Origin: Sminthopsis crassicaudata
Lineage: Eukaryota
DNA length: 64,000 nt
Direction of reading: 5' to 3'
NCBI RefSeq assembly: GCF_048593235.1
Contig: NC_133618.1
Span: 478,523,294 to 478,587,293 of the forward strand
This document shows, piece by piece, positions 17,601 through 43,700 of the stretch; within the stretch, counting starts at the first letter, position 1; each line of letters opens with the position of its first letter. Under the pieces are notes generated by a model. It saw only the letters and a list, made by a program, of their open reading frames with translations, was not told the DNA's origin and searched no databases. The translations under genes and the position numbers were made by a program.

Positions 17601-17700
17601 GGAAACAAAGTTGTTGTCAAAAAGATTAACAAGTCAGACAAAAGTCAGTCTGTCACTTAGCTGCACTTTCTGTGTATGCCCGAAGTGCATTGCTAAGGTA

Positions 17701-18033: not shown

Positions 18034-19059
18034 TCAATAAATCTGATATTTTCCTCCTGGGTCAAAGATCACACACTGTCTATTTATTCTAGTGATTAAA
18101 ACAGCAATTTTCCAACCCATTCTAGGCATAAACACTGTTTTATAAGTACCCGTAGGGGGTTGGGAAATCAAGCTCACCTGTGGAAGTGGAAAATCCACGA
18201 GGTAAGAAAAGAGGAGTTTCAACTCTCCAAAGACGATCCTAGCAGTTTTACAAGTATAAAACTCCACTCTCTCTAACTGCAAGGTCTTATCCCTGTAAGA
18301 TTTCTTAGAAATTAACTGAACTGTATTTTTAAAACTTTTCTGATTATACTCAATACCCCACAATTCCTTTTTGCCTTGGGCCATAAAGACCACTCCTGTC
18401 CTTTGAGATGAAGACACAGGAGTTTTGAATGGATTAATGAGCAGTGCTGATGGTATTATCGCCCTTCCTTTTCCTCCTCCCCCTTCTCCCTTGGCCCAAG
18501 AAGGTGAGGCAGAGGGAAGAAGAATTGGAAAATCCCCCAAAGGCTGATTCAAAATCAAACCTGAGCTTTGCACATAAAAAGAACTAAACTTCTTCTCAAT
18601 GAAAGAGTAATCAATAAATTCCTTAAAACAACAATGCAGGAGGTAAACCAACAAAATGCTAAGAAGAATTTCTACAACTGAAGTCCATGTGGTTCCTTTA
18701 TTTCCTTCCTTAGTTTCAGCCACTGGTTTGAACTCTTCCTGTTCTATCTGTAGTAACCTAGCTTTTTCTTCTTTCTCTATCTCAATCTGTAGTTTAACCT
18801 GCAATTCCAGCAACTCTTGCTGTGGCATTTTATACTCTCTACTGTCATACAATCGCATTAGCTCTAGGTTGCTCCCTCTCCGAGCTGTATCTAATAGGTG
18901 TGGGGATAGCCTTCTGGGAGCCTGATTACAAGCTTCCTGCTGTTCTTCAGTGGTGATCTTTGTTAAAAGATCTTCCATCTGGCTCTTTAACCTCTTTATA
19001 TAATAAGCATTATGTTCAGCTGTGTCCTTGAGTCTGATCCCAGATTTACCTGGGTCCAT
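18034..19059 (-). CDS. Orphan 341-aa ORF of the LTR element (coiled-coil N-terminus, one predicted TM helix at about aa 125-145, unknown C-terminal domain)
   Basis: ATG in strong Kozak context (gcaatATGG) about 100 nt after the PBS; no internal stops over 1026 nt; no Gag, protease, RT or Env motifs recognised. Confidence 0.7.
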   Translation of the reverse strand: MDPGKSGIRLKDTAEHNAYYIKRLKSQMEDLLTKITTEEQQEACNQAPRRLSPHLLDTARRGSNLELMRLYDSREYKMPQQELLELQVKLQIEIEKEEKARLLQIEQEEFKPVAETKEGNKGTTWTSVVEILLSILLVYLLHCCFKEFIDYSFIEKKFSSFYVQSSGLILNQPLGDFPILLPSASPSWAKGEGGGGKGRAIIPSALLINPFKTPVSSSQRTGVVFMAQGKKELWGIEYNQKSFKNTVQLISKKSYRDKTLQLERVEFYTCKTARIVFGELKLLFSYLVDFPLPQVSLISQPPTGTYKTVFMPRMGWKIAVLITRINRQCVIFDPGGKYQIY

Positions 19060-19182: not shown

Positions 19183-19746
19183 TGTAACGTGCTCTCCTGG
19201 CAGTTACAATTACTAGTCTGTCCTAGACCCACCAGAGTACCTTTGACCACTGTCCTTTGCAGTGTGAGCTCTACCCGGCTCGCCTCCTCTGAGGCCTTCT
19301 AAGGTCTCTGGTCACAATCTCTTGAATCTATAGCTTAGTAACCGGTAGCGCACTCAAGAACAGCCACGTGTAATCTTAAAAGCCTTTATTATACCTACTC
19401 ACATAATGCCCTAGCTGATGCCCTGACTTGTTGGTTCCCGAGTGAACACCTGGTCAGAAGACCCATGTGTTCACTACCAAAATCCTTACCTCTTTCGGCT
19501 ACCCATCTTGGCTTGGCCACCCAGGCTGGTGAGCCAGGGTGAACAGCACGAGGTTAAAGAGGGCGGTTGCTGCCTGCAGTGGGCTTACATAGGGCCTGTG
19601 AGGTCACACACACAGCCAATCAGCGAGAGAGTCACCCATTACGAAACTATCTCAATATGGCCAGGATCCCGCCCAAGGGCAGTCCTAATACTTCTGGGCC
19701 TCAATCTCCCGATGCACTGTGTCCGCCCATTTAAAGGGCCCTTACA
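19183..19746 (-). mobile_element. 5' LTR (564 bp)
   Basis: Followed on the minus strand by the PBS; has CCAAT and GC boxes, and AATAAA at 19390-19385. Confidence 0.95.
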
Positions 19747-19752
19747 GCTAAG

Positions 19753-20910
19753 AAATAGACTAGTTGATCAGTGGCTTAGGTTAGGTTCACAGGGCAAGAT
19801 AGTGAATAAAAATAGCAATCTAGTGTTTGACAAACCCAAAGATCCCAAATTTTGGGATAAGAATTCATTATTTGACAAAAACTGCTGGGAAAACTGGAAA
19901 TTAATATGGCAGAAACTAGCCATGGACCCACATTTAACACCACATACTAAGATTAGATCAAAATGGGTCCAAGATTTAGGCATAAAGAATGAAATCATAA
20001 ATAAATTGGAGGAACATGGGATGGTTTACCTCTCAGACTTGTGGAGGAGGAAGGAGTTTGTGTCCAAGGGAGAACTAGAGACCATTATTGATCACAAAAT
20101 AGAAAATTTTGATTACACCAAATTAAAAAGTTTCTGCACAAACAAAACTAATGCAAACAAGATTAGAAGGGAAGTAATAAATTGGGAAAACATTTTTACA
20201 GTTAAAGGTTCTGATAAAGGCTTCATCTCCAAAATATACAGAGAATTGACTTTAATTTATAAGAAATCAAGCCATTCTCCATTTGATAAATGGTCAAAGG
20301 ATATGAACAGACAATTTTCAGATGATGAAATTAAAACTATTTCCACTCATATGAAAGAGTGTTCCAAATCACTATTGATCAGAGAAATGCAAATTGAGAC
20401 AACTCTGAGATACCACTACACACCTGTCAGATTGGCTAAGATGACAGGAACAAATAACGATGAATGTTGGAGGGGCTGTGGGAAAACTGGGACACTGATG
20501 CATTGTTGGTGGAGTTGTGAAAGAATCCAACCATTCTGGAGCGCAATCTGGAATTATGCCCCAAAAGTTATCAAAATGTGCATACCCTTTGACCCAGCCA
20601 TACTACTACTGGGCTTATATCCCAAGGAAATACTAAAGAGCGGAAAGGAATCTGTATGTGCCAAAATGTTTGTGGCAGCCCTTTTCATAGTGGCTAGAAG
20701 CTGGAAGATGAATGGATGTCCATCAATTGGAGAATGGTTGGGTAAATTATGATATATGAATGTTATGGAATATTATTGTTCTGTAAGAAATGACCAACAG
20801 GAGGAATACAGAGAAGCTTGGAGAGACTTACATCAACTGATGCTAAGTGAAACGAGCAGAACCAGAAGATCATTATACACTTCAACAATGATATTGTACG
20901 AGGATGTATG
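19753..20910 (+). pseudogene. L1 ORF2 C-terminal segment (premature TGA at 20750-20752)
   Basis: NRLVDQW...KNCWENW...CWRGCG...HCWW...CPSIGEWLGKL*YMNVMEYY. Confidence 0.9.
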
Positions 20911-29176: not shown

Positions 29177-29287
29177 TCACTCCTGCTCTTTGCTAGGTTT
29201 CTTATCACTCGGAGGTGGTGTGAGGAGTCCATTGGGAGCAGACACTCTCTCATCAGCCAACATGGCTTGTTTTTCATAAGCTTTGTC
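29177..29287 (-). CDS. CCNE1: CCNE1 last coding exon ([36 protein letters not shown])
   Basis: ttttag|GAC; TGA at 29179-29177; LLTPPxS Fbw7 phosphodegron. Confidence 0.96.
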   Translation of the reverse strand, partial: DKAYEKQAMLADERVSAPNGLLTPPPSDKKPSKEQE

Positions 29288-32200
29288 CTAAAACAAGATC
29301 AAAGGAGAGAAATGACACTGGTTAAAAAAAAAAAAGCAGGTTTTTTACATATTTATTTATTAATTTCTGAAGAGAACACATCTAATATTTCTTAAACCCT
29401 ACTACACTTTCAAAACTGTCCCTTATATTAAGGTATTTTAGCAAATCAACATTAATTTTGAGTAAAATAAATCTTAAATTCAGAAGTGATAATCTAGGGA
29501 CAAGGATATTAAAAGGGGGAAACGATCAGTTTCATATTGCTATAATAAGGTATATCTCAAATCAAATTCAGGATTTTTTTACCAACTGATTTCTTAAAAA
29601 TCTACCTTAGATGTATGAAAAAACTAACAAAAATATAAATTTATGAAATAAACTCACAAAAAAACAAAGTCATATAAAGTTTATCTAACACCTAGAAGTA
29701 GAATTTTCTTCAGTGATTTAAAAATATATAATTAAATGGGTGGGTGGGTGTCTTTCTGGGTTATTTATATGTAGTCTTGTCTGGGGTAAGGACTACATGG
29801 ACTGGGTAAGGTCACTTCTAGAATGATGTTCTATTTTGTCATCATTAAATCAAGTCATAAGAAAATATAAATGTTAATACTGACCAGCAAATTTATGGTG
29901 TTCACATGAGTCTGAATGTTATGCATGTCTTCACTAGGAACACCCTTAAAATATTTGAGTCTGGCTCCACCTACTTCCTTTACAGCCATAGCAAATGGGA
30001 CCATCCATTTCACACAATCCTCTACTTCTGGCCAATCAAATCCTGGAAAACAAAGTGAAAATTGCTTAAGCTAAAGCTTAAAATGTAGATATGTCAACTT
30101 TATACATGCTTCAAATTAAACTGAAATCCAACTTACCTGAAACTTTTTTCATTATCTCAGTGGAAGAGAAATGATATAAGGCAGATGCAGCTAGCACTCC
30201 ATAAGTAAAATCAAAGCAGCCCATATCCAGGATGCAGACATCTAAAAGCTATAGGAGGATGGGGAAAACATGATATAGAACAAGTCCATCAATCAATACC
30301 TCCATAAAATTAAGATAGATGAGCTGTCACACAAAATGGGATAAGTTATAGTGCTGGTACTTACCTCAGCAACCTGAACAAAGATTTGCTGAGGATACTG
30401 TGGCATAAGCACTTCTTCATACAGGTCATTGAGATAAGCAACCTGCATATATACATTTAGCCAGGACACAAGTGTCATCGGACTTAAACGCCATTTAAGG
30501 GCCTAGAGTAAAATGAAGGAGAAGGCAAATTTAGAGATCAACAGCTAAGCCAAAAATAATGGAGCACCCTGCCATGCAGTGGTAGATTGTCATACAAATA
30601 ATCAACCATTTTTGAGACTTAGAAGGTTATCACTTAATTTAAAGAGTATGATAATACAATTGAAGATGAATCAAATTCAAACAGGCAATTGCTTTCATCT
30701 TTGAAGAAATTCTAAATGAAGATTGAGCAGAAAATGTTTTATAAATCATTACTAACTTACCTTCATAATGATTAATTCCATGGTAAGAATTTCTTCCTCG
30801 GTACAAGCTCCATCGGTCACATAAGCAAACTGGTACAACTTTGGTGGATAGATTTCCTGAATGAAAAATAAATAAATAATGCCATCATGACCATCAAATC
30901 CAAACATAAATATTTTTATGTCATAATGTTTATCTAAACATGCTTTTGCTGAACCAGTTTTGACTGATGAAGATATAAAAACATAAACATTCTACTTTTG
31001 ACTTAAGAATCTTGAGTTCTAGCACCTTTAAATGGTTAATCCATAGCAATATAGTCATGGAAAAATATAAGAAACCACTAGTAGTCAAAATGCCTGTGAA
31101 ATCTGAAAGAAATTAATAAACTGTGCTTGCTGTCATATACTTTTAGAGCATTTTTTTTTTGGTCCCCTCAATGTTGTTAGCTTCACATTTAAAAGTTACC
31201 TAACTTTTAGCACAAGTTGCCAAGATTAAGGCTGTTTCTTCCATCTAAACCATATTCATAGTCCAAAAGTAAAGTACTTTCCATACCATAAAAATAAAAC
31301 AGTCTGTTTTCTAAACATTCTAAACATGAACAGATTTCCTATCCTTACTGAAACTAACATGTAATACTAATATAAAAACTTGAACAAGTTTTACCTCAAG
31401 TTTGGCAGCTATAAATAATGAGGTAATCCCAATAAGCTGCAAAAGTGTTTTTGTAATATTTCGCTGTGTTGCCATATATCGATCAAAGAAGTCTTGTGCC
31501 AAGTAATACGTCTCCCTGTGAAGTTTATAGACTTCAGACACCTGAAAAAATATTTAATAAGTTTTAGTACATTTACCTGAAAGAATGTTTTTCATGGGCT
31601 TTCAATGTTTTGCTTTTAGGCAAAACAGCAAAAACAAAAGTGCTGACAAGTTTACTTTTCTCCATTCTAACTTATAAGTATACTTATATAGAGAACTTGA
31701 GTCTTACTTAATATGGTCCAACTCTTCCAAATGTAGGTTTACGTAGGTGTAATGTTTATGTATAATATATATTTAATACTTAAGAGAATTAAAAACTTGT
31801 TTTCAAGAGAAACTCTCTTAAGAATTCTCATAAATTATTATCAATCTTTATAAATTTAATTTTAAAAATGTTATATGACTTGGGCATCACATACCTTATA
31901 GCACTAGATGGTTGAAATAGCAAAAAAGTTTAATAAACATTAATATACAGTCATTTAAAGACAGGCGCAAAGTCAAGCTTCAAAGGCATCACAGTATGGC
32001 AGAAATATTAATGGACCAAGAGGAAGACCTTGATCCTAGTCCCAGCTCTATCATTAAGTGAATATGTCTTTATTCTCATTTGTAAAACAGGTAAAACTAC
32101 CCAGCCTAATTGGTTGTTGTGAGAATCATAAGTTGTGAAGGTGCTTTGTAAATGACAAATTGCAATAAAAATGTAAGATATCACAAAAGCTAAAAAAAAA

Positions 32201-35200
32201 AAAACACTAAACACTGAATCTTTCTAGTAATAGGATATGCCAACATTAACATGTTAATGTTTGAAAATTTGTCTATGTTAGAATCTAAATTGTATGCGAG
32301 CAAAAGGTAGGCATATTTTTCAAGGGATAGGTAGAAAAGAATGATTGGAAGGGTAAGGAGACAGAAACTTAAGTAAACAAAATAAGTTTATGAAGATTCC
32401 TTAGCATACCAAAACCACTTCTAATGATTAGAGTTAACATCCCTCACTAGTATTCAAGTTCCACTTATATTTTGGAACAGAAGTAAAACCCAACTCTAAA
32501 AGTGAAACTCTTTTGTTGTTTCTAAGACAAATTTTCAGAAATCCTTTTCTAAGCCCCAAATTTGGTACTTGCCATTAATAGTGTAGGCACCCTTTACATA
32601 CACAAAAGTCACAGTTGTAATAAGTATTAGGTTTCTTAGCTTATCTGACTTTTAAACTGTTACTCAGTTTAACCCAGAAATAGCAGAATTTGGTAACAGA
32701 GTTAAGAGTTACAGGAGGCATAATTTTAAAAAATAATTTATCAAAAGTAATACATGATGAAGAACCTCTCATAAAAGATTGGATATGCCAGATAAGATGG
32801 ATTTACCTATAACAGTCACAAAATAGGGAACAACTTTACTTCATGTCTGATACTGATTTTAAACAATCAAAATGTTTGTTCCAGGGCCAAATTAGAAAAG
32901 AAAAACAGAATTACTTTGATTTCTATGTTTTGGAAATGAGAAAGGGAATGAATACTCCATGGATTAAAAAAAAAAACCAGAACACCAATTCAAAGAATTC
33001 TTTGTAAATGAGCATAATATGATCACGTACTTGTTTATACTATACTGTCACAGTTAATGAGAACAGTCAAACTCACCTCCATCATCCAATCCAGAAGGAT
33101 GGATCGCATTCTTGGCTGGAGAGAAGGATGTCTCTCCATAAAGTTCTTATCCCTCAGATATACCTGTTCTTTGCTTAACATGATTTTCCAAACTTCATCT
33201 CTATTTGCCCAGCTATAAAAAAAAATGAAACACTTATTAAAGTGCCTAAAAATTAGAAGGAAAGCTATAGTGAAAAGCTACAGATATATAAATGGATATG
33301 GCAGTTTAACTACTCACCCCAATAAGGGTAAGGGTGTAGCTCTATGTTGTGAAAAGTTGTGGGTTGGCATATTAGAATTAGGTAAGGATGGCTCATCCCA
33401 TCCTTTATCAGGTGTAAGAATCACTGACCATGGATTTCTGAGAAAAGCCTGTTGAAGAAAAACATTTTTTTAAGTGATGAATTACTCTAAATCACTCAGT
33501 ATAAAGGATATAAATGATTCTTTAAATCAGATAATATTTATTAATAAAAAAGAAATATTTACACACTACAGAAAAATATTGGTGTCATTGTCTTAATTAA
33601 AACAGAACCTTGCATTTTGTGGGATAAAGACAAGTCTGGATTAGGGATTTTTAACTCTTTTGGCAATCAGGTAAAGAGTATAGACTACTCAGTGTTTTGT
33701 TTTTTAATACATAAAATACACAGGATTACAAAATAAATTAGTTATACTGAAATATACTTATCAAAATATTAAAAAAATAAATTCATGAATCCAATTAAAT
33801 ATATTCAAAGACAGCAGATTAAGAACCCTTTGTCTAAATAAATGAAATTCATATAACCTCAAGTATTCATTTTGGCTATTAACTTTGTCTCTTTATCTAG
33901 CAAGCCCCTCCTATTTAAAATTTAATTTTTAGAAACATTCTTCACACCCTTTTGTGGCATTTTATAAAAGATCTCTTGGCTTCTATTACCTCATTTACTT
34001 AGACTTTATCTAAAGTTACAGACCAATCTACAATCAAATTAACAAAAAGAGATCAAGTAAATATATTCTACAACAAAATATTTGCTTTCAGCTGGCTGTG
34101 CGTACTAAAAAGTATAAAAATAAGATTTCCCAAACCAAACTGCTCTGGTAACTTTTGCGGTAGCAAATCTGAAATGAAATCCATCAGTTGCTGCACCTTT
34201 CAGATTCATGATAGAAGGAACTAGGCAACCTTTTCACATAGCTCCCTTAAATTGAAATTTTACTTTCTGTATCTGCTCTATCTTCATATGGTACTAAAAA
34301 GTACAAGAATACAACTTTAAAAAAATTTAACTCCCTTGAAAGAGAATCAAAATGCTTGACACATTTAAAAAATTTTTATACATTTTAAGAAAAACAAACA
34401 GTAACTCTAGGATTGTGAGAACTAAAATTTATGCCATCTATAAAAACCATAAAAACAGAAAATCAAAACATTTAAGACCACCTTTGCACACCAAATGTAT
34501 CCCAAATGTTATAGTGGTCTCAGTTGAAGTTTTGGAATATTTGATTTCTATTCAAATAGGAATGTTTTGACAAAGTTTGAGTTACATTAAGACTTATTTT
34601 AAGTTACCATATTTAATTTCTGGCTTTATAAACAATTTTAGACTCAATTTTAGGAACTCCTTATCCTCTTTTTTTTTTTTTTTTAAAGCAATGCAGCCAT
34701 CTTGCCGAAAATGTCAGCCAACTATGCCTCTATGGAAAACCCGCAGAAAAGTCTGAATTTATTTGCATTTCCACTATTTTAATAAGGAGGGAGCCTATTA
34801 AGTTTTAATACAAAAGACTGAAAAAATTGTAAATGAATGTAATCTAGCTTCTGGCTCAAAAGTAGTGTTGATTAGGCAATAATACGTAGTTCCTTATTTA
34901 ATACATTTTACATACTATGTATCATTCAGAGGTTACTTATGCATTTTTCAAGCTGCAAAAAAGTATCTCAGTTGAAAATAAGTCTTCTCCCTGCCTCCTC
35001 TAAAAATATAAGACTACTCTTCACCCAAGGCAGAAAGAGCTCTAGATATGCAAGATTTCCCCCTCAGAGTTCATGGGATAATTTGTGGGAGAAAGGGAGC
35101 TCCTACTAATTAGTCTATAACATGCTACTGATACCATCTCTATAATTCAACATGTTAAGAGTGCTTTAAGTTAATTTTACTCTTTCTATCAGTGGGCCAG

Positions 35201-38200
35201 GAATTTTGTTATGAGGGCACAATCAGTGTCATCTTCTCTGACTATGTGATTGGCAAAGCTAAGAATAGGTTTTTGTAGATAAGTTGCCAAACATCTTAAA
35301 ACTACAAGTCAGAGAATAGTTACAAGAGAGCTAACAATTGATAAGTTTTTTCCCAGAAGACACATCTTAGAAAAGAAATAGGTAAATCAGAACAACATTC
35401 TACTATTATGTTGAGTGTACCTTGAAGATGTACCTAGCTTTCAAAAACTAGCCCAAAGTAAAGAGAGTTATAGAGAAGAATGGTATAAACTAAAAGCTCA
35501 AGTTAATATAACAATGAAATAGAATGTTAGGGCTACAAATTTCCTGAAGCAACATGGTGGATATACTATATTTGTCTTAGAATTCCACAAAATTGCTACT
35601 AATATTTAGTAGGAGACTTGAAGATAAATATTATCCTAGGACTAAATATGGTGTTGATGAAGTAGTTATTCAAAACAACTTTACTAATGATTTTTAAAGA
35701 CAGTTTTCAGAAAACTGTCCATTGTTCTATTACATATGCACTTACTTCAGCAGATCAATGATTATTACATGTTTGACTGAATGACTTTATCCACAAACCA
35801 ACCAAACGATTTCTATTTCCAAATTTTGCCTTTACAAATTAACATTCCCCAAGTAAACTGATAAACTCAGATATCAATATGTTTAAAAAATAAATAGGAA
35901 ACTGTTCTGAGTATGTAGAAAATTTCAAGAAACCCTTAAAAATATCCATGAATGGAAATTAATAAGTAAATTCTATAATTGGAAAGTGTTATACAGAGGT
36001 AAACTATTATCATATTCTATTAATATATCAGAGACCAAGAGATCTGCTTGGTCTATTCCTCATTTAAGAACTGGAAACATTTTTAAGTATTTACATTTTA
36101 AAAATAAGCTTAATTAGCTCAGTATCCATTGTTGCTGTTCTCCCTAAGCAATGAAGTTGCGCATAGTAGATACTATGATTAGGTACTATGGTACTAAGAT
36201 TTGTGAGAGAAGAAAAAATAAATTTATTTTCTAATCAAAGTATATCTAATGCCATATTTTACATTTTTAAATAGGATTATAATACTTCCCATAACCCTCA
36301 TTATTGGGTTTGATTAAAAGATAGGCTTAGAGAGTATGAGAAGACATGAGAAAAAAGGAATAACTATTGCCTTTACTAAACTAAAAAAATTTTTTTCCTA
36401 TATAAGAGGAAGTCACCAATCTCACTCTTCAATGTTCAGTGAATCCTGCTTATGAAAGACTGAATGTGTCTTTTATATTCAACTATGACTACCATTTCAA
36501 ACAATGTTGCCCATCTGCTGTGAAGCACTTTACTCTTTAAGGTTCCAGCTGCTACCTCTGTTTATATATGTCTCATTGTTCATTATCCTATGAAATGATG
36601 TACTACCCAACCCCAAATTAGTCATTAGCATTTAACTCAGAATAAATAAAATATTCCTGCTTTTGTTTTTTATATGATGTTATAAGATATGACAGGGGGT
36701 AGGGTGGGGAGAATGAGAGATATTTTCTCTAAATCCAAACCATGACTATGATTTCCAGTCATTTCTGGAGGTAAAGATAGCATGGACTCTTTTCATAATG
36801 AGCATCAGCTATCACAATGTATAATTTTAGTGGCTTATCTTTAAGGGAAAGATAAGACAAATAGATTAGTCCACTGAAATTCTATAATGGAACGTACATT
36901 AATATTCGATATCTTCAATAGGTATATAAGTGAACTTATACCTGTTAAGGTCAGTTCAAATCCCAGCTGGTAGGGACACTTATTTAAATGTTAAATACAT
37001 ATAAAAATCACAGGCCAGAGACAGTGAGGCAGTCATCAAGATACAAATCAAGGCATTTTATTTAATGTTACCACGTGCTCTGTGCAGAAGGAATTCAAGA
37101 ATTTCCAAGAATTTCAGAGGTATAAAAGGACTTTCCAAATAGAATGAGATCTTCATTTAGAAGCTTATTCTTTCAGAAACCATCATTAATCCACTTAACT
37201 TGAGCTATTTGTTCTTCTTCAGAAGTTCACTAAGACATTTGGATCACATAAGAGCGCCTACACTGGAATAAGAATCTAGAGAGCTTGGCTTTAAGTCTGC
37301 CTGCCAGTAATTAGCTTTGTTACTCTATAGGCAAATCATTTTACCTCTCTAGGACTCAGTTTCCTTCCCAGTAAAAGGAAATGCTTAAAACAGATATTTG
37401 CAAGGATTTTTTCCAGGTATTATAGGACATCTAAAATCTAAGGGGAAGAGTGAGCAGTCTCAATTTAAGAGCTGGGAATACATAATTAGGCAAGGATTAC
37501 ATTTAATTCCACTGAGCGAGGAAGAATAAAAGAATATAGTAGAAGCATGATTATAGTAGCATGGAGAGAGTAAACTGGAGAGTTAAAAAATCATCTTTAT
37601 CAATACTGGAAAATAACAATGATCATACTTGTAGATTATGAATCTTACCGGTATCCTGACTGCAGTTCTTCCAATTGTTTCTCTTTTGGCCAAAACTTCA
37701 TCTGGGTCCAGCAAAAACTATATCCAAAAAACACATTCAAACAAGAGAGAGAATCTTAAACACAAAAACTGTGAGCATAAAGTTTGACCCAAAAAACTGT
37801 CTTTTCTAATCCAATCTTTTCCCCACAATACTAAGGATCCCTACAGTACTAGGATACTTGCAATCTATTTCAGGGAAGTAATTCCCCATATTTTACTTCT
37901 CTTGTACTCACCACAGCTACATCTGCCTTTCTTTTCCGGGATCGAGAGGATTCTGTTGAGCTGCTGCCACTTTGCTCATTTACCCTCTTCATGTTCTCTT
38001 CCTCTTTTCCATTCCCATCAGGGCTTCTTTCCCCCTTCCTTCCAGTACTGGGACTTTGATCATTCTTTCCGTCAAAGAGCTCACCAGCACTTGGATCTTG
38101 CCTGGCATCAGGATTGGGGTCTTCCCTGCCATCAGGTCTTGGATCTTCCCTGCCGTCAGGGGTTGGATTTTCCCTTGCATTTGGTCTTGGCTCATCCCTC

Positions 38201-39072
38201 CCATCAAAAAGTTCATGGAGACTTGGATCTTGCTCCCCACAGATAAGCTCATGAAAATTTGGATCTTCTTCCTCACAGATGAGATCAATAGGATTTGGGT
38301 CTTCTTCCTCACAAATAAAGTCATCCTCATCAGGGTGTGGGATTTCCTCCTCACAAATAAGATCATCAGGGTTTGGGCCTTGCTCCTCACAAATAAGATC
38401 ATCTGAGTTTGGGTCTTCTTCCTCACAAATAAGTTCATCTGCGTTGGGATATTCTTCGTCACAGATAAGCTCCTCAGGACTGGCATCTTCCTCGTCAATG
38501 GCATCTTCTTCATCACACATAAGCTCATCAAGGATGGGATCTTCCTCTTCACAGATCAGCTCATCGGCATGGGGATCTTCTTCCTCACAGACAAGCTCAT
38601 CTAAGCTCGAACCTTCCTCCTCACAGACAAGCTCATCTAAGCTCGAACCTTCCTCTTCACAAACAAGTTCGTTGGGGTTTGGATCTTCCTCTTCATAGAT
38701 AACTTCATCAAAGCTTGGATCATCGCCATAAACAAGCTCATCAATACTTGGATCTTCTTCCCCGTCAAAGAGCTCATCAGGGCTTGGCTCATGCGTACCG
38801 TTCATAAGCACATCGGGACTCCGCTCCTGTGTACCATTCATAAGCTCATCATGGCTTGGCTCTTCCTTTCCATTCACAAGTTCACCGGAGTTTGGTTCTT
38901 CCTTCTCATCAACATGATCTTCCTTCCCATCCTGGGCAAATTCCTCCTTCTCGTGGCATTCCTCAGAACCACTGCAAAAAATAAAACCAATGGGGATTAT
39001 TGGGAGGAGCTTTGCCCCTCAACCAACTTCTCTCTTTCCCTGCCACAGAGATACTCACCTTTCTCTGGACAT
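29177..39072 (-). CDS. CCNE1: Cyclin E1 (G1/S-specific), spliced CDS of 11 coding exons, 2172 nt / about 723 aa, with a roughly 316-aa acidic repeat insertion near the N-terminus
   Basis: Exons assembled by hand: 39059-39072, 37912-38971, 37649-37717, 33318-33448, 33077-33212, 31395-31541, 30761-30856, 30365-30502, 30137-30248, 29885-30042, 29177-29287. All introns are GT-AG and the joined frame is open. The peptide has the cyclin E hallmarks [22 protein letters not shown], the cyclin box ([21 protein letters not shown]) and the C-terminal LLTPPPS degron. Confidence 0.97.
29885..30042 (-). CDS. CCNE1: CCNE1 exon 11 ([19 protein letters not shown]...[13 protein letters not shown])
   Basis: 158 bp, ttttccag|GA...CTG|gtcagt. 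Confidence 0.97.
30137..30248 (-). CDS. CCNE1: CCNE1 exon 10 ([37 protein letters not shown])
   Basis: 112 bp, tag|CTT...CAG|gtaagt. Confidence 0.97.
30365..30502 (-). CDS. CCNE1: CCNE1 exon 9 ([46 protein letters not shown])
   Basis: 138 bp (one codon longer than human), tag|GCC...GAG|gtaagt. Confidence 0.98.
30761..30856 (-). CDS. CCNE1: CCNE1 exon 8 ([32 protein letters not shown])
   Basis: 96 bp, cag|GAA...AAG|gtaagt. Confidence 0.98.
31395..31541 (-). CDS. CCNE1: CCNE1 exon 7 ([23 protein letters not shown]...FIAAKLE)
   Basis: 147 bp, cag|GTG...GAG|gtaaaa; cyclin box core. Confidence 0.98.
33077..33212 (-). CDS. CCNE1: CCNE1 exon 6 ([45 protein letters not shown])
   Basis: 136 bp with canonical splice sites; start of the cyclin box. 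Confidence 0.97.
33318..33448 (-). CDS. CCNE1: CCNE1 exon 5 ([44 protein letters not shown])
   Basis: 131 bp, ttcttcaacag|GCT...GG|gtgagt; contains TPDK and TPLPLL, homologous to human TPDK and SPLPVL; phase fits exon 6. Confidence 0.9.
37649..37717 (-). CDS. CCNE1: CCNE1 exon 4 ([23 protein letters not shown])
   Basis: 69 bp, tag|TTT...CCG|gtaaga; matches human FLQDPDEEMAK exon in length and sequence. Confidence 0.93.
37912..38971 (-). CDS. CCNE1: CCNE1 exon 3, expanded to 1060 bp (acidic LxCxE repeat array, then NMKR...[14 protein letters not shown])
   Basis: Acceptor tttattttttgcag|T and donor GTG|gtgagt. Open frame for 353 codons ending in the conserved cyclin E NLS RSRKRK. Entry phase matches exon 2. 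Confidence 0.9.
38086..38202 (-). repeat. Coding 24-bp (8-aa) repeat, about 5 units, consensus GREDPRPD
   Basis: GRDEPRPN / ARENPTPD / GREDPRPD / GREDPNPD / ARQDPSA in the exon 3 translation. Confidence 0.85.
38200..38904 (-). repeat. Coding 36-bp (12-aa) minisatellite, about 19 units, consensus EEEDPNPDELIC
   Basis: Periodic gagcttatctgtgaggaagaagatcc motif. Units 38585-38620 and 38621-38656 are identical at 35 of 36 nt. Confidence 0.95.
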
Positions 39073-39102
39073 TGTGGCAGAGCAAGGGCTAAGACCTCAG
39101 TT
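39059..39102 (-). CDS. CCNE1: CCNE1 exon 2 (5'UTR plus start codon; coding part 39059-39072, MSRES)
   Basis: Acceptor ctctttctgtccctctag; ATG at 39072 in context gccacaATGT; donor AG|gtgagt. Fourteen coding nt ending in phase 2, resembling mammalian MPRER. Confidence 0.85.
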
Positions 39103-40180
39103 CTAGAGGGACAGAAAGAGGAAAGATTAAAAGGACTAAGTCTTTGCCGAATTGTAGCGATCTATCCTGCGGCCATCTAATTCCCAAGAGGCCACCTCCC
39201 ACCTAGTCCTTCCACCTTCTCTCCCAGGGCAGTGGCAGGGAAAGCCTTCCAAGCCTGGGGGGAGGCGGGGAGAAGGAATGGCAATTTGGAAAGAGAGAGG
39301 GGCTACGCATTCTCAACCCCAATCTCCAAGAGATAACCTACCCACCCATTGCAATGAGACTTTCTAACCTCCCGCTCAGCCCTCTGAGAACAGCGGTCCA
39401 CGCGGTACGCTAATCTTTCAAACTCAAGTGCAACCAGGACTACCAGACTTGCTTCTGTGGGTTTATGTGCAAAGTTAGGGAACTGGGGTGGTATGGGGCA
39501 AAGTCCCTCCACCCTGTCCCCTCTTGGCACATCTCCACACAAACCATCAGGCACGAGAAAAAAAAGCAACCTAGTGGTAGTAGCTGCGGTGCGGCGGTGG
39601 AGGCGGCGGCGGCGGTTCATACGGATAATTCTGGGGTCCGCACTATCCCGATTCCCCTGCTCTCGAATCTCACTCACCTACTCAACCTCCCCCTTACCTC
39701 CGCCGTTGCACTGGCAGGCGGCCACACACCGGGAATCCAGGTGGCAGAAGCAATGACCGAGCAAGGCAGGAGTCTTGCCAGGGGTAGCCTTGCCAACCTG
39801 CCGGATGACAGGCGGCTAGTACCGCGGACCTGGGTCAAGTCTGCTAGCGAGCTGACCGTGCACTCCTCTGCCTCTACCTCCCTAGCCCATCTGAGCCTAT
39901 CTCCCGCCTGCTCACTGCCCGCTCTGGGGCTGGCTGGCTCCAGCTTGCTGGCTGGCTGGCTGGGCTGGCCTGCCCGCCCTCAGGGGCGGCGTTTGCGGCT
40001 CCCACTCCCCGCCCTCCTTCACCGATCTCCCGCCTCCACATGCAGCTCCTCCCGCCAAGCCACACCGTGCGGAGTGTGGCCCTTGCCGGCTCCGCCGACT
40101 GGTCTTGACCGGTGGCGGCTGAAGGACGCAGAGCTCCATCTCTGGCACCAGCCGCTGTCATTGCGCTGGAAGGATGAGGA

Positions 40181-40278
40181 TGCGAGGACCCGGCTGCAAG
40201 GACCCGGCTGCGAGGACCCGGCTGCAAGATAGGCTGCAGGGTCTTGGCTGCAGGGACTTGGCCGCAGGGATTTGGCTG
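40181..40278. repeat. 14-bp GC-rich minisatellite in the CpG island (gaggacccggctgc x3, then ggctgcagggactt-like x3)
   Basis: Seen directly in the sequence. Confidence 0.85.
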
Positions 40279-40424
40279 ACTCCGCACTGTGAAGACTTGG
40301 CTGCTGGCACTTGGCTGTTATCAGAACTCCGTGGTGGAACTCCGTAGCTGTGGCGCCGGGATACCCACCACACCACCTCCCTCCTCCTCCCGCCCTCTTT
40401 TGGGAACCCCAGGTGCATCCTTAC

Positions 40425-40770
40425 CCGCAGCGGGCGGCGGCTGGTGGCAGAAGCGGCAGCGGGCACAGGCGGTGGAGGCTGTGGCAGAGGAGCTGGAGGA
40501 GGCGGTGGGGGTGGCGGTGGAGGCAGAGGTTGAGGAGGTGGAGGTGGTGGCGGCGGCAGAGGCGGCGGGGGCTGCTGGTGAATGCCCGCAGGCGGCAGCT
40601 GGCGATCGGGGTTGGCCGAGGGAGGCAGGGTGAAGAGGAGGAGAGGCAAAGGCCGGAGGCGAAGAAGTAGGAGGCCGAAGGAGGCGAAGCTCGGAGCTCC
40701 TGGGCAGCTCTGGTGGGATGTGCAGGGCGCAGCTACCTTCCTTTATACCCTGACTGCCCGCGCCCCCCTC
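40425..40770 (-). other. Putative non-coding exon 1 of CCNE1
   Basis: Runs from the CERM-like TSS to a donor CGG|gtaagg at 40424. Other donors exist (39697, 41536), so the exon cannot be fixed without RNA data. Confidence 0.4.
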
Positions 40771-40771
40771 C

Positions 40772-40789
40772 AGCGGGACATTAAAAAAA
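40772..40789 (-). promoter_or_regulatory. CERM-like element (AT-rich tract plus variant E2F site, TTTTTTTAATGTCCCGCT) at the likely TSS
   Basis: Closely resembles the TTTTAAATGTCCCGCT cyclin E repressor module of the mouse/human cyclin E promoter. Confidence 0.75.
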
Positions 40790-43700
40790 TATCTAAGGCG
40801 CGCAGTGGCCCCCCCACCCCACCCCCTCATTTCTCCCCCTCCTCTCCTTACTTCCCCACCCCCACTCCCTACCCTCCTCCCCCTACCCCCACCCCAGGTC
40901 TGGCCAGTCCCGGCCTCAGTGCTTGGGCCGGACCAGGGCCAGCTCTCTCTGCCTGGGCGTCGAACTCTGGAGGTAGGGGGCACGGGGCCAGCAGCTCCGG
41001 ATGGGAGGCTGCACCGCCCCCCCACCCCCTTCAACGTGCAGGGAGCATGCGCATTAAAGTGCAGCTGCCTAAGTGGGGGGGGGGGCCTCCTGGAGCTCTG
41101 GGAGAGGCGAAGGGAGGGGGGGGTGCTTGCAACTCTAGGGCCCGGGGAAGGGAGGCGGGGCTGGCCCAAGCACTGAGCTGAAGGAGCTGCAAAAAAACAG
41201 CGTGGTCGGCTCCAAATCCGTGTAAACAAGGGAGCGATTGTATAGCCGTTTTGGAGGGGGGGGAATGAGTATGGGGCCCCCAGACTTCAGTCTTGGTTCC
41301 AGCCTCAGAATTGGGGAACGGTATGGGATGAACTTAGAAAGTGGAGTGGAAGGGAGGCGTTACTGTTCTCTGGTGCCGTCGCGGTCGTAGTTGAGCTTGG
41401 TGTCTTTCTCCACGGTGTGTGGCGGGAGGGAGTCTTAGCCTCTTTTCTTGAGTTTTGAGACCGTGCCGCTAGTCCCACCTCTCCCACTTCTCCCCTTTTT
41501 GGGGATATATCTAACGCAGGATAACACCAAACTTACCTGGCTCTGCAGAAACTTGTGTGATTTTCCATTCTTCTGCCTCTCATTCATGCGCAACCACTGA
41601 TTCCAAGTCTTGGGACACCTTTCCAACCCAGGTCGAGCTTTCTAGCTCTTGAGACCTCTTCGCACTTACGGGCTGTTGCAGCCATTCTGGCCCCTGGTTT
41701 TATGCACCTTAGTACTTAGCTGTACATGGGTCTTGCATTGATATCAGACATGACTGTGAATTGGGGTTCTTCCAAAGGAACCTTCCAAAAGACTGTAAAC
41801 TGAAATATGATGTTCCTGGGCCCCTCAACAAAATGCCACAGCCATATTTTCTGAACCAAAATTGGGAGTGGGGGAAAGTTTTATCTGACAAAGAATGTTT
41901 CTTTGGGAAAGCATCCTTGGTTGAAATATACTTTCTTTTCTTAAAATGAAACTCTGAAAAATACAGAGTTTAGAATCTCTACTCCCAAACCCAACTCTAG
42001 GAGGTGTAGTAGATACTTGATTATATTTGTGGGATGAATGAGTGAATGAATAAAGACATAGCTGTTTCGTGGGAAGAGAATGGATTTGGAGTCAGAGGTC
42101 CTGTATTCATTATCAAGCTCTGCTGCTTACCGCTAGTGTGACTTTTGGCAAATTAGTTTCTTTATCTATCGATCACAGGTTGGACTCTCCATAGATGAAG
42201 ATCTAACTGACATTTAGTGCTTCTTCAAATGAATAAGGATGACAGGATGTTATGAATAAATGGATAATGATAGAGGGCTTCTGCCAATTAATGAATAAAG
42301 ATGATGGTCTCCATGGTGCCTGGTGTGAGAGGGATTGCAAACTGATTACTAGGCTCCAGGTGTGCTTGGGGAAAGAGAGGCAGGGAGAAACCTGAGTAAG
42401 TTGATCATGCAGTTTAATTGTACTGAGTTAAAGGAATAGGCTTTTAACCCAAATCTTTCTCTTATTGACTCTGATTTGTGAGGCAACTCCCTTAATCTCT
42501 TTGGGTCTCAGTTCCCATTCTGTAAAATGAAAATTAAATGGAATTAGATTAGACCTGCCAACAAAAAACACCTTCCAACTCAACAGTCAGTGATTTTTTT
42601 TAAGTTCATGAGGCAAAATTTAATTAAACAAACATTTATTTATTTATTTTTGAGTACTCACCATATACAAATCTCTACTAGGGAAATCCAAGATAAAATA
42701 TGTCCACTGGCCTCAAAAAGCTTACAGTTTAGTGCTCATTTAGGAAAACTAAATCTTCCTTAATCCCTTGGTTTTCTGTTTTCCTGATCCTTTCCTAGAC
42801 CATTTTTACTGAAGTTTAGGGAATAACAAAATAGGGATTTGGAGGGAATGATACTGGTTTAGATTAGAGGAACAAGATTAGACACAAACATGGGAAATGG
42901 GAGAAGACAAGCGCCAAATTTGAAGAGAGCCATGCACATTTCATCATCTGGGGTAGGGACCTTTCTGCCTTTGGAGGGGGATCTCCCTGGGAAAGAGACA
43001 GCCTTCTCAGAGCACACTACACCTAATCCTCCCTTACAGATATACAAATTATAGTTCCTCTTGGGAGATATGGACATAATGAGGCAAGGCAAGCATTTTG
43101 AGGGTTTGTTTTCTCTCTGATAGTCCGTGAAGTTTGGGCAGCTGTGTGCACAACTGGACTTTGCTGTCACTGAGGCAGCCTCTGTCTGTTTGCAGTTGGT
43201 ATTGATTACACTCCAAGGAAGTGAGCTCTCCTTTATCCTTGGAGCTCAGTTTTCAGTTTAGGGATTATCTGGACCCAGGGCTTTGCCTTCCTGCCAGACA
43301 TTTGGATGTTTCTAGGCTCCCTTGTTAGTATCTCAACTCCTGTTTGTCAAAGAATGAATTGACCATTTGTTAACTGGTTTTGAGGAGTAGGGATAGTAGC
43401 AAAGCAGAGTGAAATTGTTGTCTGAGTCAGAACTGGGTAACCTGTATCACAGTTTGCTGTGAGTTCAACCAGAGACAACTTCTGAAGATTACCTGTCCAT
43501 TCCAATTACATCTCTTCTACCTTTCAAAACTAAGTCCAAGTGATTGGACTGATGAAACCAGTCTTGAAAGTTTCAGAACTATCCCTTAGGCAAAAATATG
43601 AAGTAATGGAAATCATCTTTAGCATCTGTACTTGGAACCACCTACCACAGACTTGAATTCTTGTACCCCTCCCAAATCTGAGGGTAGACCTCACTTTATC

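What the first reader, a model, noticed from the sequence alone, without database searches (positions are those of the whole stretch)
38233..38667. Cyclin E1 carries a tandem array of 11 LxCxE Rb-pocket-binding motifs
Seen in sequence: the in-frame exon 3 repeat encodes LVCEE x3, LICEE x5, LMCDE, LICDE and LICGE (11 perfect L-x-C-x-E) plus one FICEE, at about 12-aa spacing (about aa 107-251 of the predicted protein). Each is preceded by D/E and followed by an acidic patch, and some are followed by CK2-type S-x-x-D/E sites (GSSLDE). Established: LxCxE is the motif by which HPV E7 (DLYCYE), SV40 large T (LFCSE), adenovirus E1A (DLTCHE) and D-type cyclins bind the RB1/p107/p130 pocket; upstream Asp and downstream acidic or CK2-phosphorylated residues increase affinity; human and mouse cyclin E1 have no such array. 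Inference: this marsupial cyclin E1 may be a multivalent, viral-oncoprotein-like pocket-protein tether or sponge fused to the CDK2 activator. That could rewire G1/S control by super-docking Rb as a substrate, displacing LxCxE chromatin partners, or letting Rb-family proteins sequester cyclin E-CDK2. I know of no description of this. Alternatives: an acidic activation or PEST region, a Cys/acid metal-binding tract, or a SIM-like function (one IDLICEEE unit).
Basis: partly seen in the sequence, partly recalled or inferred. Interest (0 to 1): 0.95.

Follow-up and report, generated by a model that had tools for sequence, protein, structure and literature searches.

The report
Marsupial cyclin E1 LxCxE repeat domain
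All marsupials examined carry a cyclin E1 almost twice the usual length, because one exon has grown into a conserved, expressed acidic repeat holding 10-12 copies of the short motif that viral oncoproteins and D-type cyclins use to grip the retinoblastoma protein. Whether the repeat actually binds that protein has not been tested.

Summary
On the minus strand, window 38233-38667 encodes 11 perfect L-x-C-x-E motifs plus one FICEE, about 12 aa apart, at aa 107-251 of the product.

- **Gene:** it is CCNE1 of the fat-tailed dunnart. All 723 residues of the RefSeq protein map onto the window.
- **Expression:** RNA contigs from three runs splice exon 2 (which holds the ATG) to exon 3 and exon 3 to exon 4 at GT..AG sites. 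They cover all of exon 3 with no internal splice.
- **Distribution:** the array is present in 11 marsupial species of four orders, with 10-12 strict motifs each. It is absent from monotreme, eutherian, sauropsid, amphibian and fish cyclin E1 (395-450 aa).
- **Selection:** it is under frame-specific purifying selection (omega 0.13-0.39; control frames 0.9-2.1). The L, C and E positions change five times more slowly than the linkers.
- **Expected binding strength:** by published affinity rules most units lack the +2/+3 hydrophobic residue, so each should be a weak ligand of the cyclin D/BRG1 type. One or two units per species fit better.

I read it as a translated, disordered, marsupial-specific docking domain, most likely for RB-family pocket clefts. 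Binding itself is untested. I found no description in the literature.

The parts
40425..40712 (-). CCNE1 exon 1 (5' UTR) inside the CpG island. The 5' end is not fixed: the spliced contig reaches 40712 and an unspliced contig reaches 40815.
   Evidence: RNA contig joint 40425|39102 with GT..AG ends. GC content is 0.52-0.59 over 38-42 kb. There is no ATG between 40712 and 40425.
39059..39102 (-). CCNE1 exon 2 (44 nt). It carries the start codon at 39072-39070, an in-frame stop upstream, and encodes MSRE plus two bases of the Ser5 codon.
   Evidence: Joints 39102|40425 and 38971|39059 in RNA contigs. Spliced translation.
37912..38971 (-). CCNE1 exon 3 (1060 nt, aa 5-358). About 24 tandem 12-aa acidic units, followed by four 8-aa units, a spacer and the nuclear localisation signal.
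   Evidence: Splice joints on both sides in 3 runs and full contig coverage. Open frame of 382 codons. Tandem repeats of period 36 and 24. Frame-specific omega below 1.
38233..38667 (-). The flagged block: 12 Cys-containing units, 11 strict LxCxE plus FICEE, aa 107-251.
   Evidence: Conserved unit by unit in 11 marsupials. L/C/E columns change at 0.12 per column against 0.63 for the rest.
38347..38361 (-). The best-fitting unit, [10 protein letters not shown]. It has acidic residues at -1 and -2 and Ile at +2 (LxCxExPhi, as in E7). It is present in every marsupial examined.
   Evidence: EIPHP or EILHP in all 11 species. Determinants from Putta et al. 2022.
38686..38865 (-). N-terminal units without Cys ([35 protein letters not shown]), aa 41-100. 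This is the most conserved part of the domain, and its function is unexplained.
   Evidence: 0.133 changes per column against 0.50 in the Cys block. Alignment.
38090..38206 (-). Four 8-aa units of the DPxPDGRE type (24-nt period), between the LxCxE block and the nuclear localisation signal.
   Evidence: Tandem repeat finder. Translation.
37912..37950 (-). The ancestral end of exon 3, [13 protein letters not shown], which is the cyclin E nuclear localisation signal. It aligns with ...RSRKRKA[DN]V.V of all vertebrate cyclin E1 proteins examined.
   Evidence: R350-A357 invariant. No changes in 13 columns.
37649..37717 (-). CCNE1 exon 4 (FLLDPDE...RIP).
   Evidence: Joint 37912|37717 in 3 runs. 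Exact protein mapping.
29180..33448 (-). CCNE1 exons 5-12, holding the TPDK degron, the cyclin box and the C-terminus. Coding pieces are 33448-33317, 33211-33071, 31535-31395, 30856-30761, 30502-30365, 30248-30135, 30040-29885 and 29287-29180, each within about 2 nt where a codon is split.
   Evidence: Exact mapping of the 723-aa protein. Pfam Cyclin_N E=6e-43 and Cyclin_C E=9e-8.

Best explanation
In the marsupial stem lineage, CCNE1 exon 3 expanded by tandem duplication of a 36-nt unit. In other vertebrates this exon encodes about 20-35 residues ahead of the nuclear localisation signal. The result is a hyper-acidic N-terminal domain of about 320 aa (36% D+E, 9% P, net charge -103) that is probably disordered. 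It is constitutively spliced into the mRNA, translated from the exon 2 ATG, and has been kept unit by unit since before the living marsupial orders diverged.

Its central 10-13 units each present an LxCxE short linear motif with acidic flanks. The most likely mechanism is that these motifs dock into the LxCxE cleft of the B-box of pocket proteins (RB1, RBL1/p107, RBL2/p130). That would tether cyclin E1-CDK2 to its classical substrates, as the single N-terminal LxCxE of D-type cyclins does.

Each site is predicted to be weak, in the micromolar to tens-of-micromolar range. The large number of closely spaced sites would raise capture and rebinding. With 12-aa spacing, neighbouring units are unlikely to hold separate pocket domains at once.

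**Shown:** the sequence, splicing, conservation, selection and motif-level constraint.
**Inferred:** disorder, pocket binding, the weak-per-site and many-sites behaviour, and every downstream effect.
For: - **Gene and coding status.** All 723 residues of Sminthopsis crassicaudata cyclin E1 map onto the window. GT..AG joints link exons 1-2-3-4, and exon 3 is fully covered without internal splicing in runs X5, X6 and X9. An ATG with an upstream in-frame stop lies in exon 2.
- **Lineage and age.** Eleven marsupial species of Didelphimorphia, Microbiotheria, Dasyuromorphia and Diprotodontia carry 10-12 strict LxCxE motifs. All non-marsupial cyclin E1 proteins lack the array. Positional orthologues between window and wombat are 87% identical in DNA, against 71% for paralogous units, so the units are old and not homogenised.
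- **Selection.** Window-versus-wombat differences by codon position are 17:20:72. Omega is 0.13-0.39 in the coding frame and 0.9-2.1 in shifted frames. All indels are whole codons.
- **Motif-level constraint.** Over 133 unit instances, L is kept in 124, C in 131, E in 133, and -1 is acidic in 132. Parsimony counts 4 changes in 33 core columns against 61 in 97 other columns, p=6e-5.
- **Fit to the motif class.** Eleven of 12 units match the ELM-type LxCxE pattern, which I wrote from memory. Acidic residues at -1 to -3 and a C-terminal acidic or phosphorylatable stretch are published affinity enhancers.
- **Precedents.** Cyclin D has an N-terminal LxCxE that binds the Rb cleft. Cyclin E1 itself has a VDCLE element credited with pocket-protein interaction.
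- **Indirect support.** A possum polyomavirus large T antigen keeps an LXCXE motif, which suggests the cleft is in use in marsupials.
Against: - No binding data exist, and none could be produced here.
- Ten of the 12 units lack the +2/+3 hydrophobic residue said to be important for high affinity. Their second wild-card residue is E/D/G, as in the weak binders HDAC1, SMCA2 and EID1.
- Removing LxCxE-cleft docking changes cyclin D-dependent Rb phosphorylation only about 1.7-fold, so the functional gain from such docking may be small.
- The units without Cys (aa 41-100) are even more conserved than the LxCxE units. Part of the domain therefore has a function that LxCxE does not explain, and the whole array may share that other function.
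- The first wild-card position is as conserved as L and C, which the pocket-binding model does not require.
- Disorder rests on composition only. The AlphaFold2 model was poor throughout, with mean pLDDT 35.7.
- The marsupial RB-family cleft was not examined.
Confidence: 0.5

Rival explanations
1. The domain is a conserved acidic, hydrophobic-studded disordered region that does something other than pocket binding. Candidates are an acidic activation-domain-like module that recruits co-activators or chromatin factors, a histone or basic-protein binder, or an intramolecular regulator of the adjacent basic nuclear localisation signal or of CDK2. On this reading the functional element is the shared [DE][DE]-L-Phi core of all ~24 units, and the LxCxE match in half of them is a by-product of amplifying one unit.
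For: - Units without Cys have the same D-E-L-Phi skeleton ([42 protein letters not shown]). They are at least as conserved as the Cys units, at 0.13 against 0.50 changes per column.
- The first wild-card position (I/V/M) is as constrained as L and C.
- Most units lack the +2/+3 hydrophobic residue of good pocket ligands.
- Net charge is -103 and pI 4.05.
Against: - Within the Cys units, C (131 of 133) and the fifth-position E (133 of 133) are held, while the linkers vary up to 1.6 changes per column. A generic acidic-hydrophobic function does not predict that pattern.
- No other defined motif class fits. My hand check of SUMO-interaction patterns (recalled from memory, no tool call) failed for 11 of 12 units.
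- Pfam finds no family.
Confidence: 0.33
2. The array is a tolerated, essentially neutral repeat expansion in a dispensable N-terminus, with no function of its own.
For: - The cyclin E N-terminus is dispensable for CDK2 activation. Low-molecular-weight forms that lack it are active (review).
- Copy number of the G[AS]SL[DE]ELVCEEE-type units varies from 1 to 4 among species.
Against: - The array has been retained in all 11 species of four orders with unit-by-unit orthology.
- Omega is 0.13-0.39 only in the coding frame.
- Rates differ by position in the unit, p=6e-5.
- The reading frame is preserved through every indel.
Confidence: 0.06
3. The Cys/Asp/Glu-rich tract binds metal ions (Zn, Cd, Ca) or senses redox state. 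About a dozen regularly spaced thiols sit among carboxylates.
For: Twelve Cys residues at regular spacing lie in an acidic context, and Cys is nearly invariant.
Against: - Each unit has only one Cys and no CxxC or His partner pattern.
- Units that lost Cys (FISEE in Petaurus, LIYEE in Phascolarctos) are otherwise kept intact.
- No family match.
- There is no precedent in cyclins that I know of.
Confidence: 0.05
4. The repeat is transcribed but not translated as part of cyclin E1, either because translation starts downstream or because the gene model is an annotation artefact.
For: - Dasyurids have an internal Met (NMKRVN) that aligns with the start of the short eutherian isoform.
- Ensembl models for wombat omit the region.
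- No proteomic evidence was available.
Against: - The first AUG of the spliced mRNA is in exon 2 and in frame with the array.
- The internal Met is K in the eight non-dasyurid species, so it is not a conserved start.
- Frame-specific purifying selection requires translation.
- The Ensembl wombat models begin in intron-derived sequence and lack the nuclear localisation signal.
Confidence: 0.03

Closest known systems
N-terminal LxCxE of D-type cyclins (animal cyclin D1-3, plant CYCD)
   Same: A cyclin that carries LxCxE in a flexible N-terminal region ahead of the cyclin box, aimed at the pocket-protein substrate of its CDK. The predicted per-site affinity is weak, with hydrophobic residues at +4/+5 rather than +2/+3.
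   Different: D cyclins have one motif within the first ~10 residues. Here there are 10-13 motifs within a ~320-aa acidic domain, in an E-type cyclin that partners CDK2 and already has RxL/MRAIL docking. The two are not homologous; the array arose on its own by repeat expansion.
HPV E7 CR2, SV40/polyomavirus large T and adenovirus E1A LxCxE modules
   Same: The same core, an acidic residue at -1, and a downstream acidic or CK2-phosphorylatable stretch that raises affinity. One unit ([10 protein letters not shown]) also has the +2 aliphatic residue.
   Different: Viral motifs have bulky wild-card residues (Y,Y in E7) and a +2 Leu or Met, and they bind at sub-micromolar Kd. Most units here have E/D/G at the second wild-card position and no +2/+3 hydrophobic residue, so they are expected to be weaker.
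Polyomavirus superT antigen (duplicated LxCxE); JCV small t antigen is also listed for LxCxE motifs and Rb-family binding
   Same: The only multi-LxCxE proteins my literature search turned up. In superT, duplication of a segment doubles the RB-binding motif.
   Different: SuperT has two copies in a viral protein, produced by wraparound transcription. Here there are 10-13 copies encoded in the germ line of a host cell-cycle gene.
The VDCLE (VxCxE) element in the C-terminal cyclin fold of eutherian cyclin E1
   Same: An LxCxE-like element of cyclin E1 credited with pocket-protein interaction (review citing Kelly 1998).
   Different: It lies inside the folded cyclin box. In all 11 marsupials that site reads MGCFD, whereas 12 of 13 outgroups from shark to primate keep [VIL]xCLE and one fish has CLD. 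Marsupials may therefore have moved the contact rather than added one. This is speculative.
Multisite weak-motif docking in disordered regions, for example the many suboptimal phosphodegrons of Sic1 binding Cdc4 (from my own knowledge, not checked here)
   Same: Many weak, closely spaced copies of one motif compete for a single site on the partner, which raises effective affinity.
   Different: That case is phosphorylation-dependent and in a different pathway. No measurement exists for this array.

Membership tests
Cyclin E1 (CCNE1 orthologue) | Cyclin_N and Cyclin_C folds | tested here: met
   Pfam PF00134 E=6.2e-43 and PF02984 E=8.8e-8 on the 723-aa product.
Cyclin E1 (CCNE1 orthologue) | Closest relatives are cyclin E1 of other vertebrates across the cyclin box and N-terminal landmarks ([11 protein letters not shown] nuclear localisation signal, FLxDPDE, TPDK degron, MRxIL patch) | tested here: met
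   All 120 listed hits carry the cyclin Pfam domains, and the named ones are almost all called G1/S-specific cyclin-E1. The landmark columns are invariant or nearly so. The patch reads MRSIL in marsupials.
Cyclin E1 (CCNE1 orthologue) | Conserved exon structure and genomic neighbourhood | tested here: inconclusive
   Twelve exons with GT..AG boundaries. A C19orf12-domain gene overlaps the Tasmanian devil locus. Neighbouring genes in the window itself were not examined.
LxCxE pocket-protein ligand motif (ELM LIG_Rb_LxCxE class) | Core L-x-C-x-E | tested here: met
   11 strict copies in the window and 10-12 in each of 11 marsupials.
LxCxE pocket-protein ligand motif (ELM LIG_Rb_LxCxE class) | Acidic residue at -1 to -3, and an acidic or phosphorylatable stretch on the C-terminal side | tested here: met
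   -1 is D or E in 132 of 133 units and +1 is E in 116 of 133. S-x-x-[DE] sites follow three units. Criteria from Putta et al. 2022.
LxCxE pocket-protein ligand motif (ELM LIG_Rb_LxCxE class) | Hydrophobic residue at +2/+3 filling the shallow pocket, needed for high affinity | tested here: not met
   Met by only 1 unit per species (LICEEEIP), plus LICDEEYP in dasyurids. The other units have D/G at +2 and P/A at +3. The looser ELM-style pattern, which counts P and positions +2 to +5, is met by 11 of 12 units. This failure lowers the expected affinity. It does not exclude membership of the weak cyclin D/BRG1-like subclass.
LxCxE pocket-protein ligand motif (ELM LIG_Rb_LxCxE class) | Motif lies in an accessible, disordered region of a nuclear protein | tested here: inconclusive
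   The composition (36% D+E, 9% P) and the adjacent nuclear localisation signal argue for it. The AlphaFold2 model predicts no secondary structure for residues 1-380, but it is low-confidence everywhere.
LxCxE pocket-protein ligand motif (ELM LIG_Rb_LxCxE class) | Cys-dependent binding to the B-box cleft of RB1/p107/p130, competable by E7 | not testable with these tools
D-type cyclin | Cyclin D family cyclin box that partners CDK4/6 | tested here: not met
   The cyclin box is 99% identical among marsupial cyclin E1 proteins and 55-62% identical to eutherian cyclin E1. It may work like a D cyclin in docking, but it is not one.
SUMO-interaction motif array | Core of 3-4 aliphatic residues (psi-psi-x-psi or psi-x-psi-psi) next to acidic residues | tested here: not met
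   Hand check against the ELM-type SIM patterns, recalled from memory and with no tool call. L-[IV]-C has only two aliphatic residues, and only IDLICEEE comes close to the pattern.
Acidic transcriptional activation domain | Bulky hydrophobic residues embedded in acidic sequence, with reporter activity | not tested
   The composition is compatible. No predictor or assay was available.

The most novel reading that the evidence does not exclude
Marsupials have rewired G1/S control. Their cyclin E1 acquired a germ-line-encoded, multivalent Rb-family cleft-binding module on the plan of a viral oncoprotein. At the same time the ancestral pocket-protein contact in the cyclin box ([VI]xCLE) decayed to MGCFD in every marsupial. 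On this reading cyclin E1-CDK2 engages RB1/p107/p130 in a cyclin D-like, LxCxE-dependent way. It could also displace LxCxE co-repressors, or viral oncoproteins, from the cleft.
Probability: 0.2. Interest if true: 0.9.

Novelty: new variant of a known kind. Interest (0 to 1): 0.8.

Why it matters
Cyclin E1 is a core and otherwise very conservative G1/S regulator and a major human oncogene. A whole mammalian infraclass has nearly doubled its length with a selected domain built from the motif that defines Rb-pocket ligands.

- **Multivalency.** If the array binds pocket proteins, it is a natural experiment in multivalent LxCxE docking. It would also be a cellular counterpart of viral Rb-targeting modules.
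- **Cyclin D comparison.** It offers a way to ask how much LxCxE docking can contribute to CDK substrate targeting, a question still argued for cyclin D.
- **Marsupial cell-cycle and cancer biology.** It bears on fields such as Tasmanian devil transmissible tumours, and on using dunnart and opossum as models.
- **If it does not bind.** The domain would still be an unexplained, strongly conserved addition to a central cell-cycle protein.

The sequences are already in public databases under an ordinary name, so the feature is easy to follow up.

Tried and rejected
- **Wide protein search.** phmmer of exon 3 against 1.84 billion representatives found only marsupial cyclin E1 as a real relative. 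The other 22 hits are unrelated repetitive proteins, and none has an LxCxE array.
- **ESM Atlas.** It gave no usable features.
- **Pfam on exon 3.** No family matched.
- **AlphaFold2 on the full protein with a 24-sequence alignment.** Mean pLDDT was 35.7, and even the cyclin box stayed below 55. I use it only as weak support for the absence of secondary structure in residues 1-380, and ran no fold search.
- **DNA of more orthologues.** Gracilinanus and Trichosurus DNA could not be fetched because the files are too large. Two look-ups failed on a busy queue. The dN/dS analysis therefore rests on window, Tasmanian devil and wombat.
- **Literature.** 'VxCxE' plus 'cyclin E' gave nothing. Kelly et al. 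1998 is not held, so I cite it through a review. Searches for a prior description were negative.
- **The 36-nt skip in run X1 (38581|38618).** I rejected it as evidence of copy-number polymorphism. The two units are identical, and a k-mer assembler would collapse them.
- **SIM, clathrin-box, LIR and RxL readings of the units.** I checked these by hand from recalled patterns (no tool call) and dropped them.
- **Marsupial RB1/RBL1/RBL2 cleft.** Not examined, because no tool-supplied query sequence was available.
Full report
**1. What is in the sequence**

The flagged stretch is read on the minus strand. Tandem Repeats Finder reports overlapping arrays of period 36 (and multiples) across 38198-38884, and of period 24 at 38090-38206. 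Translating the minus strand gives an open frame of 382 codons.

Within it, window 38233-38667 encodes LVCEE x3, LICEE, LMCDE, LICDE, LICEE x3, FICEE, LICEE and LICGE. That is 11 strict L-x-C-x-E motifs plus one F-x-C-x-E, at aa 107-251 of the product.

- Every motif has D or E at -1 and is followed by an acidic run.
- S-x-x-[DE] sites follow three units: the two GSSLDE units and the last unit.
- Shuffling the 358-residue N-terminus gives a mean of 0.175 LxCxE and a maximum of 4 in 20,000 trials, against 11 observed.
- This excess reflects amplification of one 36-nt unit, so it does not represent eleven independent events.

**2. Which gene, and is the repeat in the mRNA**

Downstream on the same strand lie the hallmark cyclin E peptides ([29 protein letters not shown]). 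The complete 723-aa RefSeq protein 'G1/S-specific cyclin-E1 [Sminthopsis crassicaudata]' (P0143) maps residue for residue onto twelve exons of the window. It carries the Pfam domains Cyclin_N (E=6e-43) and Cyclin_C.

Contigs assembled from RNA runs were laid on 36501-42000. They show GT..AG joints at:

- 40425|39102 (exon 1 to exon 2);
- 39059|38971 (exon 2 to exon 3), in X5, X6 and X9;
- 37912|37717 (exon 3 to exon 4), in X5, X6 and X9.

Exon 3 is covered from end to end. The contigs break only at a pair of identical 36-nt units, which short contigs bridge. No contig shows an internal splice or skips exon 3, although contigs drop rare variants. Run X1 holds an unspliced copy, either pre-mRNA or DNA.

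The spliced sequence places the first AUG in exon 2 (39072-39070), after an in-frame stop. It reads straight into the array, through to the nuclear localisation signal [11 protein letters not shown] at the exon's 3' end, and on into FLLDPDE in exon 4. Calling this 'exon 3 of cyclin E1' is therefore correct, and the array is in the mature message.

**3. How widespread and how old**

A phmmer scan of 1.84 billion representative proteins found one real relative, wombat cyclin E1 (E=1e-151). The remaining hits are unrelated repeat proteins.

Word-indexed searches and cluster look-ups then recovered cyclin E1 proteins of 712-747 aa from more marsupials:

- Didelphimorphia: Monodelphis, Gracilinanus.
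- Microbiotheria: Dromiciops.
- Dasyuromorphia: Antechinus, Sarcophilus.
- Diprotodontia: Vombatus, Phascolarctos, Trichosurus, Petaurus, Notamacropus.

Together with the window's dunnart (Sminthopsis, Dasyuromorphia) that makes 11 species. Each has 10-12 strict LxCxE motifs, and the units align one to one. Only the G[AS]SL[DE]ELVCEEE-type units vary in number.

Every non-marsupial cyclin E1 recovered is 395-450 aa, apart from a few odd gene models, and none has an array. This covers echidna (395 aa), platypus (418 aa), eutherians (about 410 aa), birds, reptiles, frogs, fish and a shark. In those species the homologous exon encodes only about 20-35 residues before the nuclear localisation signal.

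The domain therefore arose after the split from eutherians and before the living marsupial orders diverged. From general knowledge, that is roughly 160-80 million years ago.

Unit DNA supports an old, non-homogenised array. Positional orthologues between dunnart and wombat are 87% identical, against 71% for paralogous units within the dunnart.

**4. Is it under selection**

Exon 3 DNA was extracted from the wombat and Tasmanian devil loci.

| Comparison (dunnart vs wombat) | Result |
|---|---|
| Differences by codon position 1:2:3 | 17:20:72 |
| Omega, NG86 | 0.13 |
| Omega, LWL85 | 0.17 |
| Omega, maximum likelihood | 0.23 |
| Omega, YN00 | 0.39 |
| Omega, same alignment in the two shifted frames | 0.9-2.1 |

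All length differences among species are whole codons, and mostly whole units. This shows translation in the annotated frame and purifying selection on the protein.

A parsimony count on the species tree, over 10 taxa (Trichosurus was left out because its middle block misaligns), shows the constraint is at motif level:

- The L, C and E columns of the Cys units changed 4 times in 33 columns.
- The other nine unit positions changed 61 times in 97 columns (binomial p=6e-5).
- Two of the four core changes are F to L, towards the consensus.
- The linker positions change at 0.5-1.6 per column, except an almost invariant Pro.
- Over 133 unit instances, L is kept in 124, C in 131 and E in 133.

Two caveats apply. 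The first wild-card residue (I/V/M) is as constrained as L and C. The N-terminal units without Cys (aa 41-100) are the most conserved stretch of all, at 0.13 changes per column.

**5. How well the units fit a pocket-protein ligand**

Putta et al. 2022 (bioRxiv 10.1101/2022.06.10.495386) list the determinants:

- an invariant L-C-E core;
- a mild benefit from acidic residues at -1 to -3;
- a benefit from a C-terminal acidic or phosphorylated stretch;
- higher affinity with bulky wild-card residues;
- a hydrophobic residue at +2/+3 that matters for high affinity.

Ligands whose hydrophobic residue sits at +4/+5 (cyclin D, BRG1, SMCA2) are weak. Cellular peptides span about 0.25 to 100 uM.

The marsupial units satisfy the core, the -1 acid and the acidic tail. 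However, they have E/D/G at the second wild-card position, and usually D/G at +2 and P/A at +3. One unit present in every species, [10 protein letters not shown] (EIL in didelphids), has the +2 aliphatic residue. Dasyurids add LICDEEYP. Eleven of 12 units match the looser ELM-type pattern, which I recalled from memory.

I therefore expect many weak sites and one or two better ones, rather than eleven E7-grade sites.

With 12-residue spacing, neighbouring units probably cannot hold separate pocket domains at the same time. Any gain would come from repeated capture and rebinding, or from a few well-separated sites being occupied. This is inference.

Three pieces of context bear on the reading:

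- Loss of the Rb cleft reduces cyclin D-dependent phosphorylation only about 1.7-fold in vitro.
- Cyclin E1 is credited with a VDCLE element for pocket-protein interaction (review PMC8652076).
- A possum polyomavirus large T antigen keeps an LXCXE motif (PMC9662318).

**6. Interpretation**

The best-supported account is a translated, probably disordered, marsupial-specific N-terminal domain. Its central block is a motif array selected at the L, C and E positions. The only defined motif class it matches is the pocket-protein LxCxE ligand, in a protein whose classical substrates are the pocket proteins. I put about 0.5 on pocket binding being a real function.

- **Main rival (about 0.33).** The shared [DE][DE]-L-Phi skeleton of all ~24 units serves another partner, and LxCxE is incidental. 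Candidates are an activation-domain-like role, binding of basic proteins, or masking of the nuclear localisation signal. The stronger conservation of the units without Cys is the chief argument for it.
- **Neutral expansion.** Disfavoured by sections 3 and 4.
- **Non-translation.** Disfavoured by section 4 and by the start-codon evidence in section 2.
- **Metal binding.** Little in the sequence supports it: there is one Cys per unit and no CxxC or His partner pattern.

**7. Comparison with what is known, and novelty**

The array works most like the N-terminal LxCxE of D-type cyclins, and in sequence context like the E7 and large T modules. It is not a member of either family.

The only multi-LxCxE proteins my searches found are viral: polyomavirus superT with two copies (PMC9007360), and JCV small t antigen, listed for LxCxE motifs and Rb-family binding. 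I found no paper that mentions the marsupial array, although the protein sequences have long been in public databases under the plain name cyclin E1.

I class it as a new variant of a known kind.

**8. Limits**

- No binding, proteomic or ribosome-profiling evidence was available.
- The structure model is uninformative.
- The selection analysis uses three DNA sequences.
- The marsupial RB-family cleft was not examined.
- The ELM and SIM patterns were written from memory.

Noticed in passing
window 30210-30224 (minus strand; aa 606-610): The cyclin-box element reported to mediate pocket-protein interaction in eutherian cyclin E1 (VDCLE) reads MGCFD in all 11 marsupials. In 12 of 13 outgroups from shark to primate it is [VIL]xCLE, and one fish has CLD. 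Its decay coincides in lineage with the gain of the N-terminal LxCxE array, so the contact may have moved. The hydrophobic patch is MRSIL in all marsupials.
   Followed up: partly
window 38686-38865 (minus strand; aa 41-100): The repeat units without Cys ([35 protein letters not shown]) are the most conserved part of the domain, at 0.13 changes per column. ELFDG recurs three times across the domain. The Tyr units look like acidic tyrosine-kinase substrate sites. No known motif class could be assigned.
   Followed up: partly
window 37966-37983 (minus strand; aa ~335-340): Dasyurids have an internal Met (NMKRVN) that aligns with the start codon of the short eutherian isoform (MKEDGG). The other eight marsupials have Lys there, so an array-free isoform that keeps the nuclear localisation signal cannot be a general marsupial feature.
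   Followed up: partly
window 38581-38618: The unspliced contig of run X1 lacks one 36-nt [12 protein letters not shown] unit. The two units are identical, so this is most likely an assembler collapse rather than a copy-number allele. The number of such units does differ among species, from 1 to 4.
   Followed up: partly
window 40430-40650 (exon 1, 5' UTR): A GC-rich triplet-like repeat (33-nt period at 40499-40562, and 14-nt repeats at 40181-40278) lies in the CpG-island promoter and 5' UTR. It would read as poly-Pro in one frame but sits upstream of the in-frame stop. RNA contigs were cut at 40488-40574.
   Followed up: no
window 41479-41911: A separate RNA contig in run X6 lies upstream of the CCNE1 promoter. 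It could be an alternative first exon or a divergent transcript. The Tasmanian devil locus lists a C19orf12-domain gene on the opposite strand.
   Followed up: no
window 14101-15354 (+): A 417-aa open frame with a reverse transcriptase domain (RVT_1, E=1.6e-45), presumably a LINE remnant downstream of CCNE1. Nearby long ORFs at 18034-19059 (-) and 19442-20752 (+) have no Pfam match.
   Followed up: partly
window 16669-17119: A tandem repeat of 49 nt in 9.2 copies at 90% match, and a 24-nt AT-rich repeat at 17698-17854.
   Followed up: no
P0150 and P0151 (wombat, UniProt/Ensembl models): Two public wombat 'Cyclin E1' models of 362 and 370 aa start in intron-derived sequence and omit exons 2-4, including the array and the nuclear localisation signal. 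Automated pipelines disagree on this exon, which may be one reason the feature has gone unremarked.
   Followed up: yes
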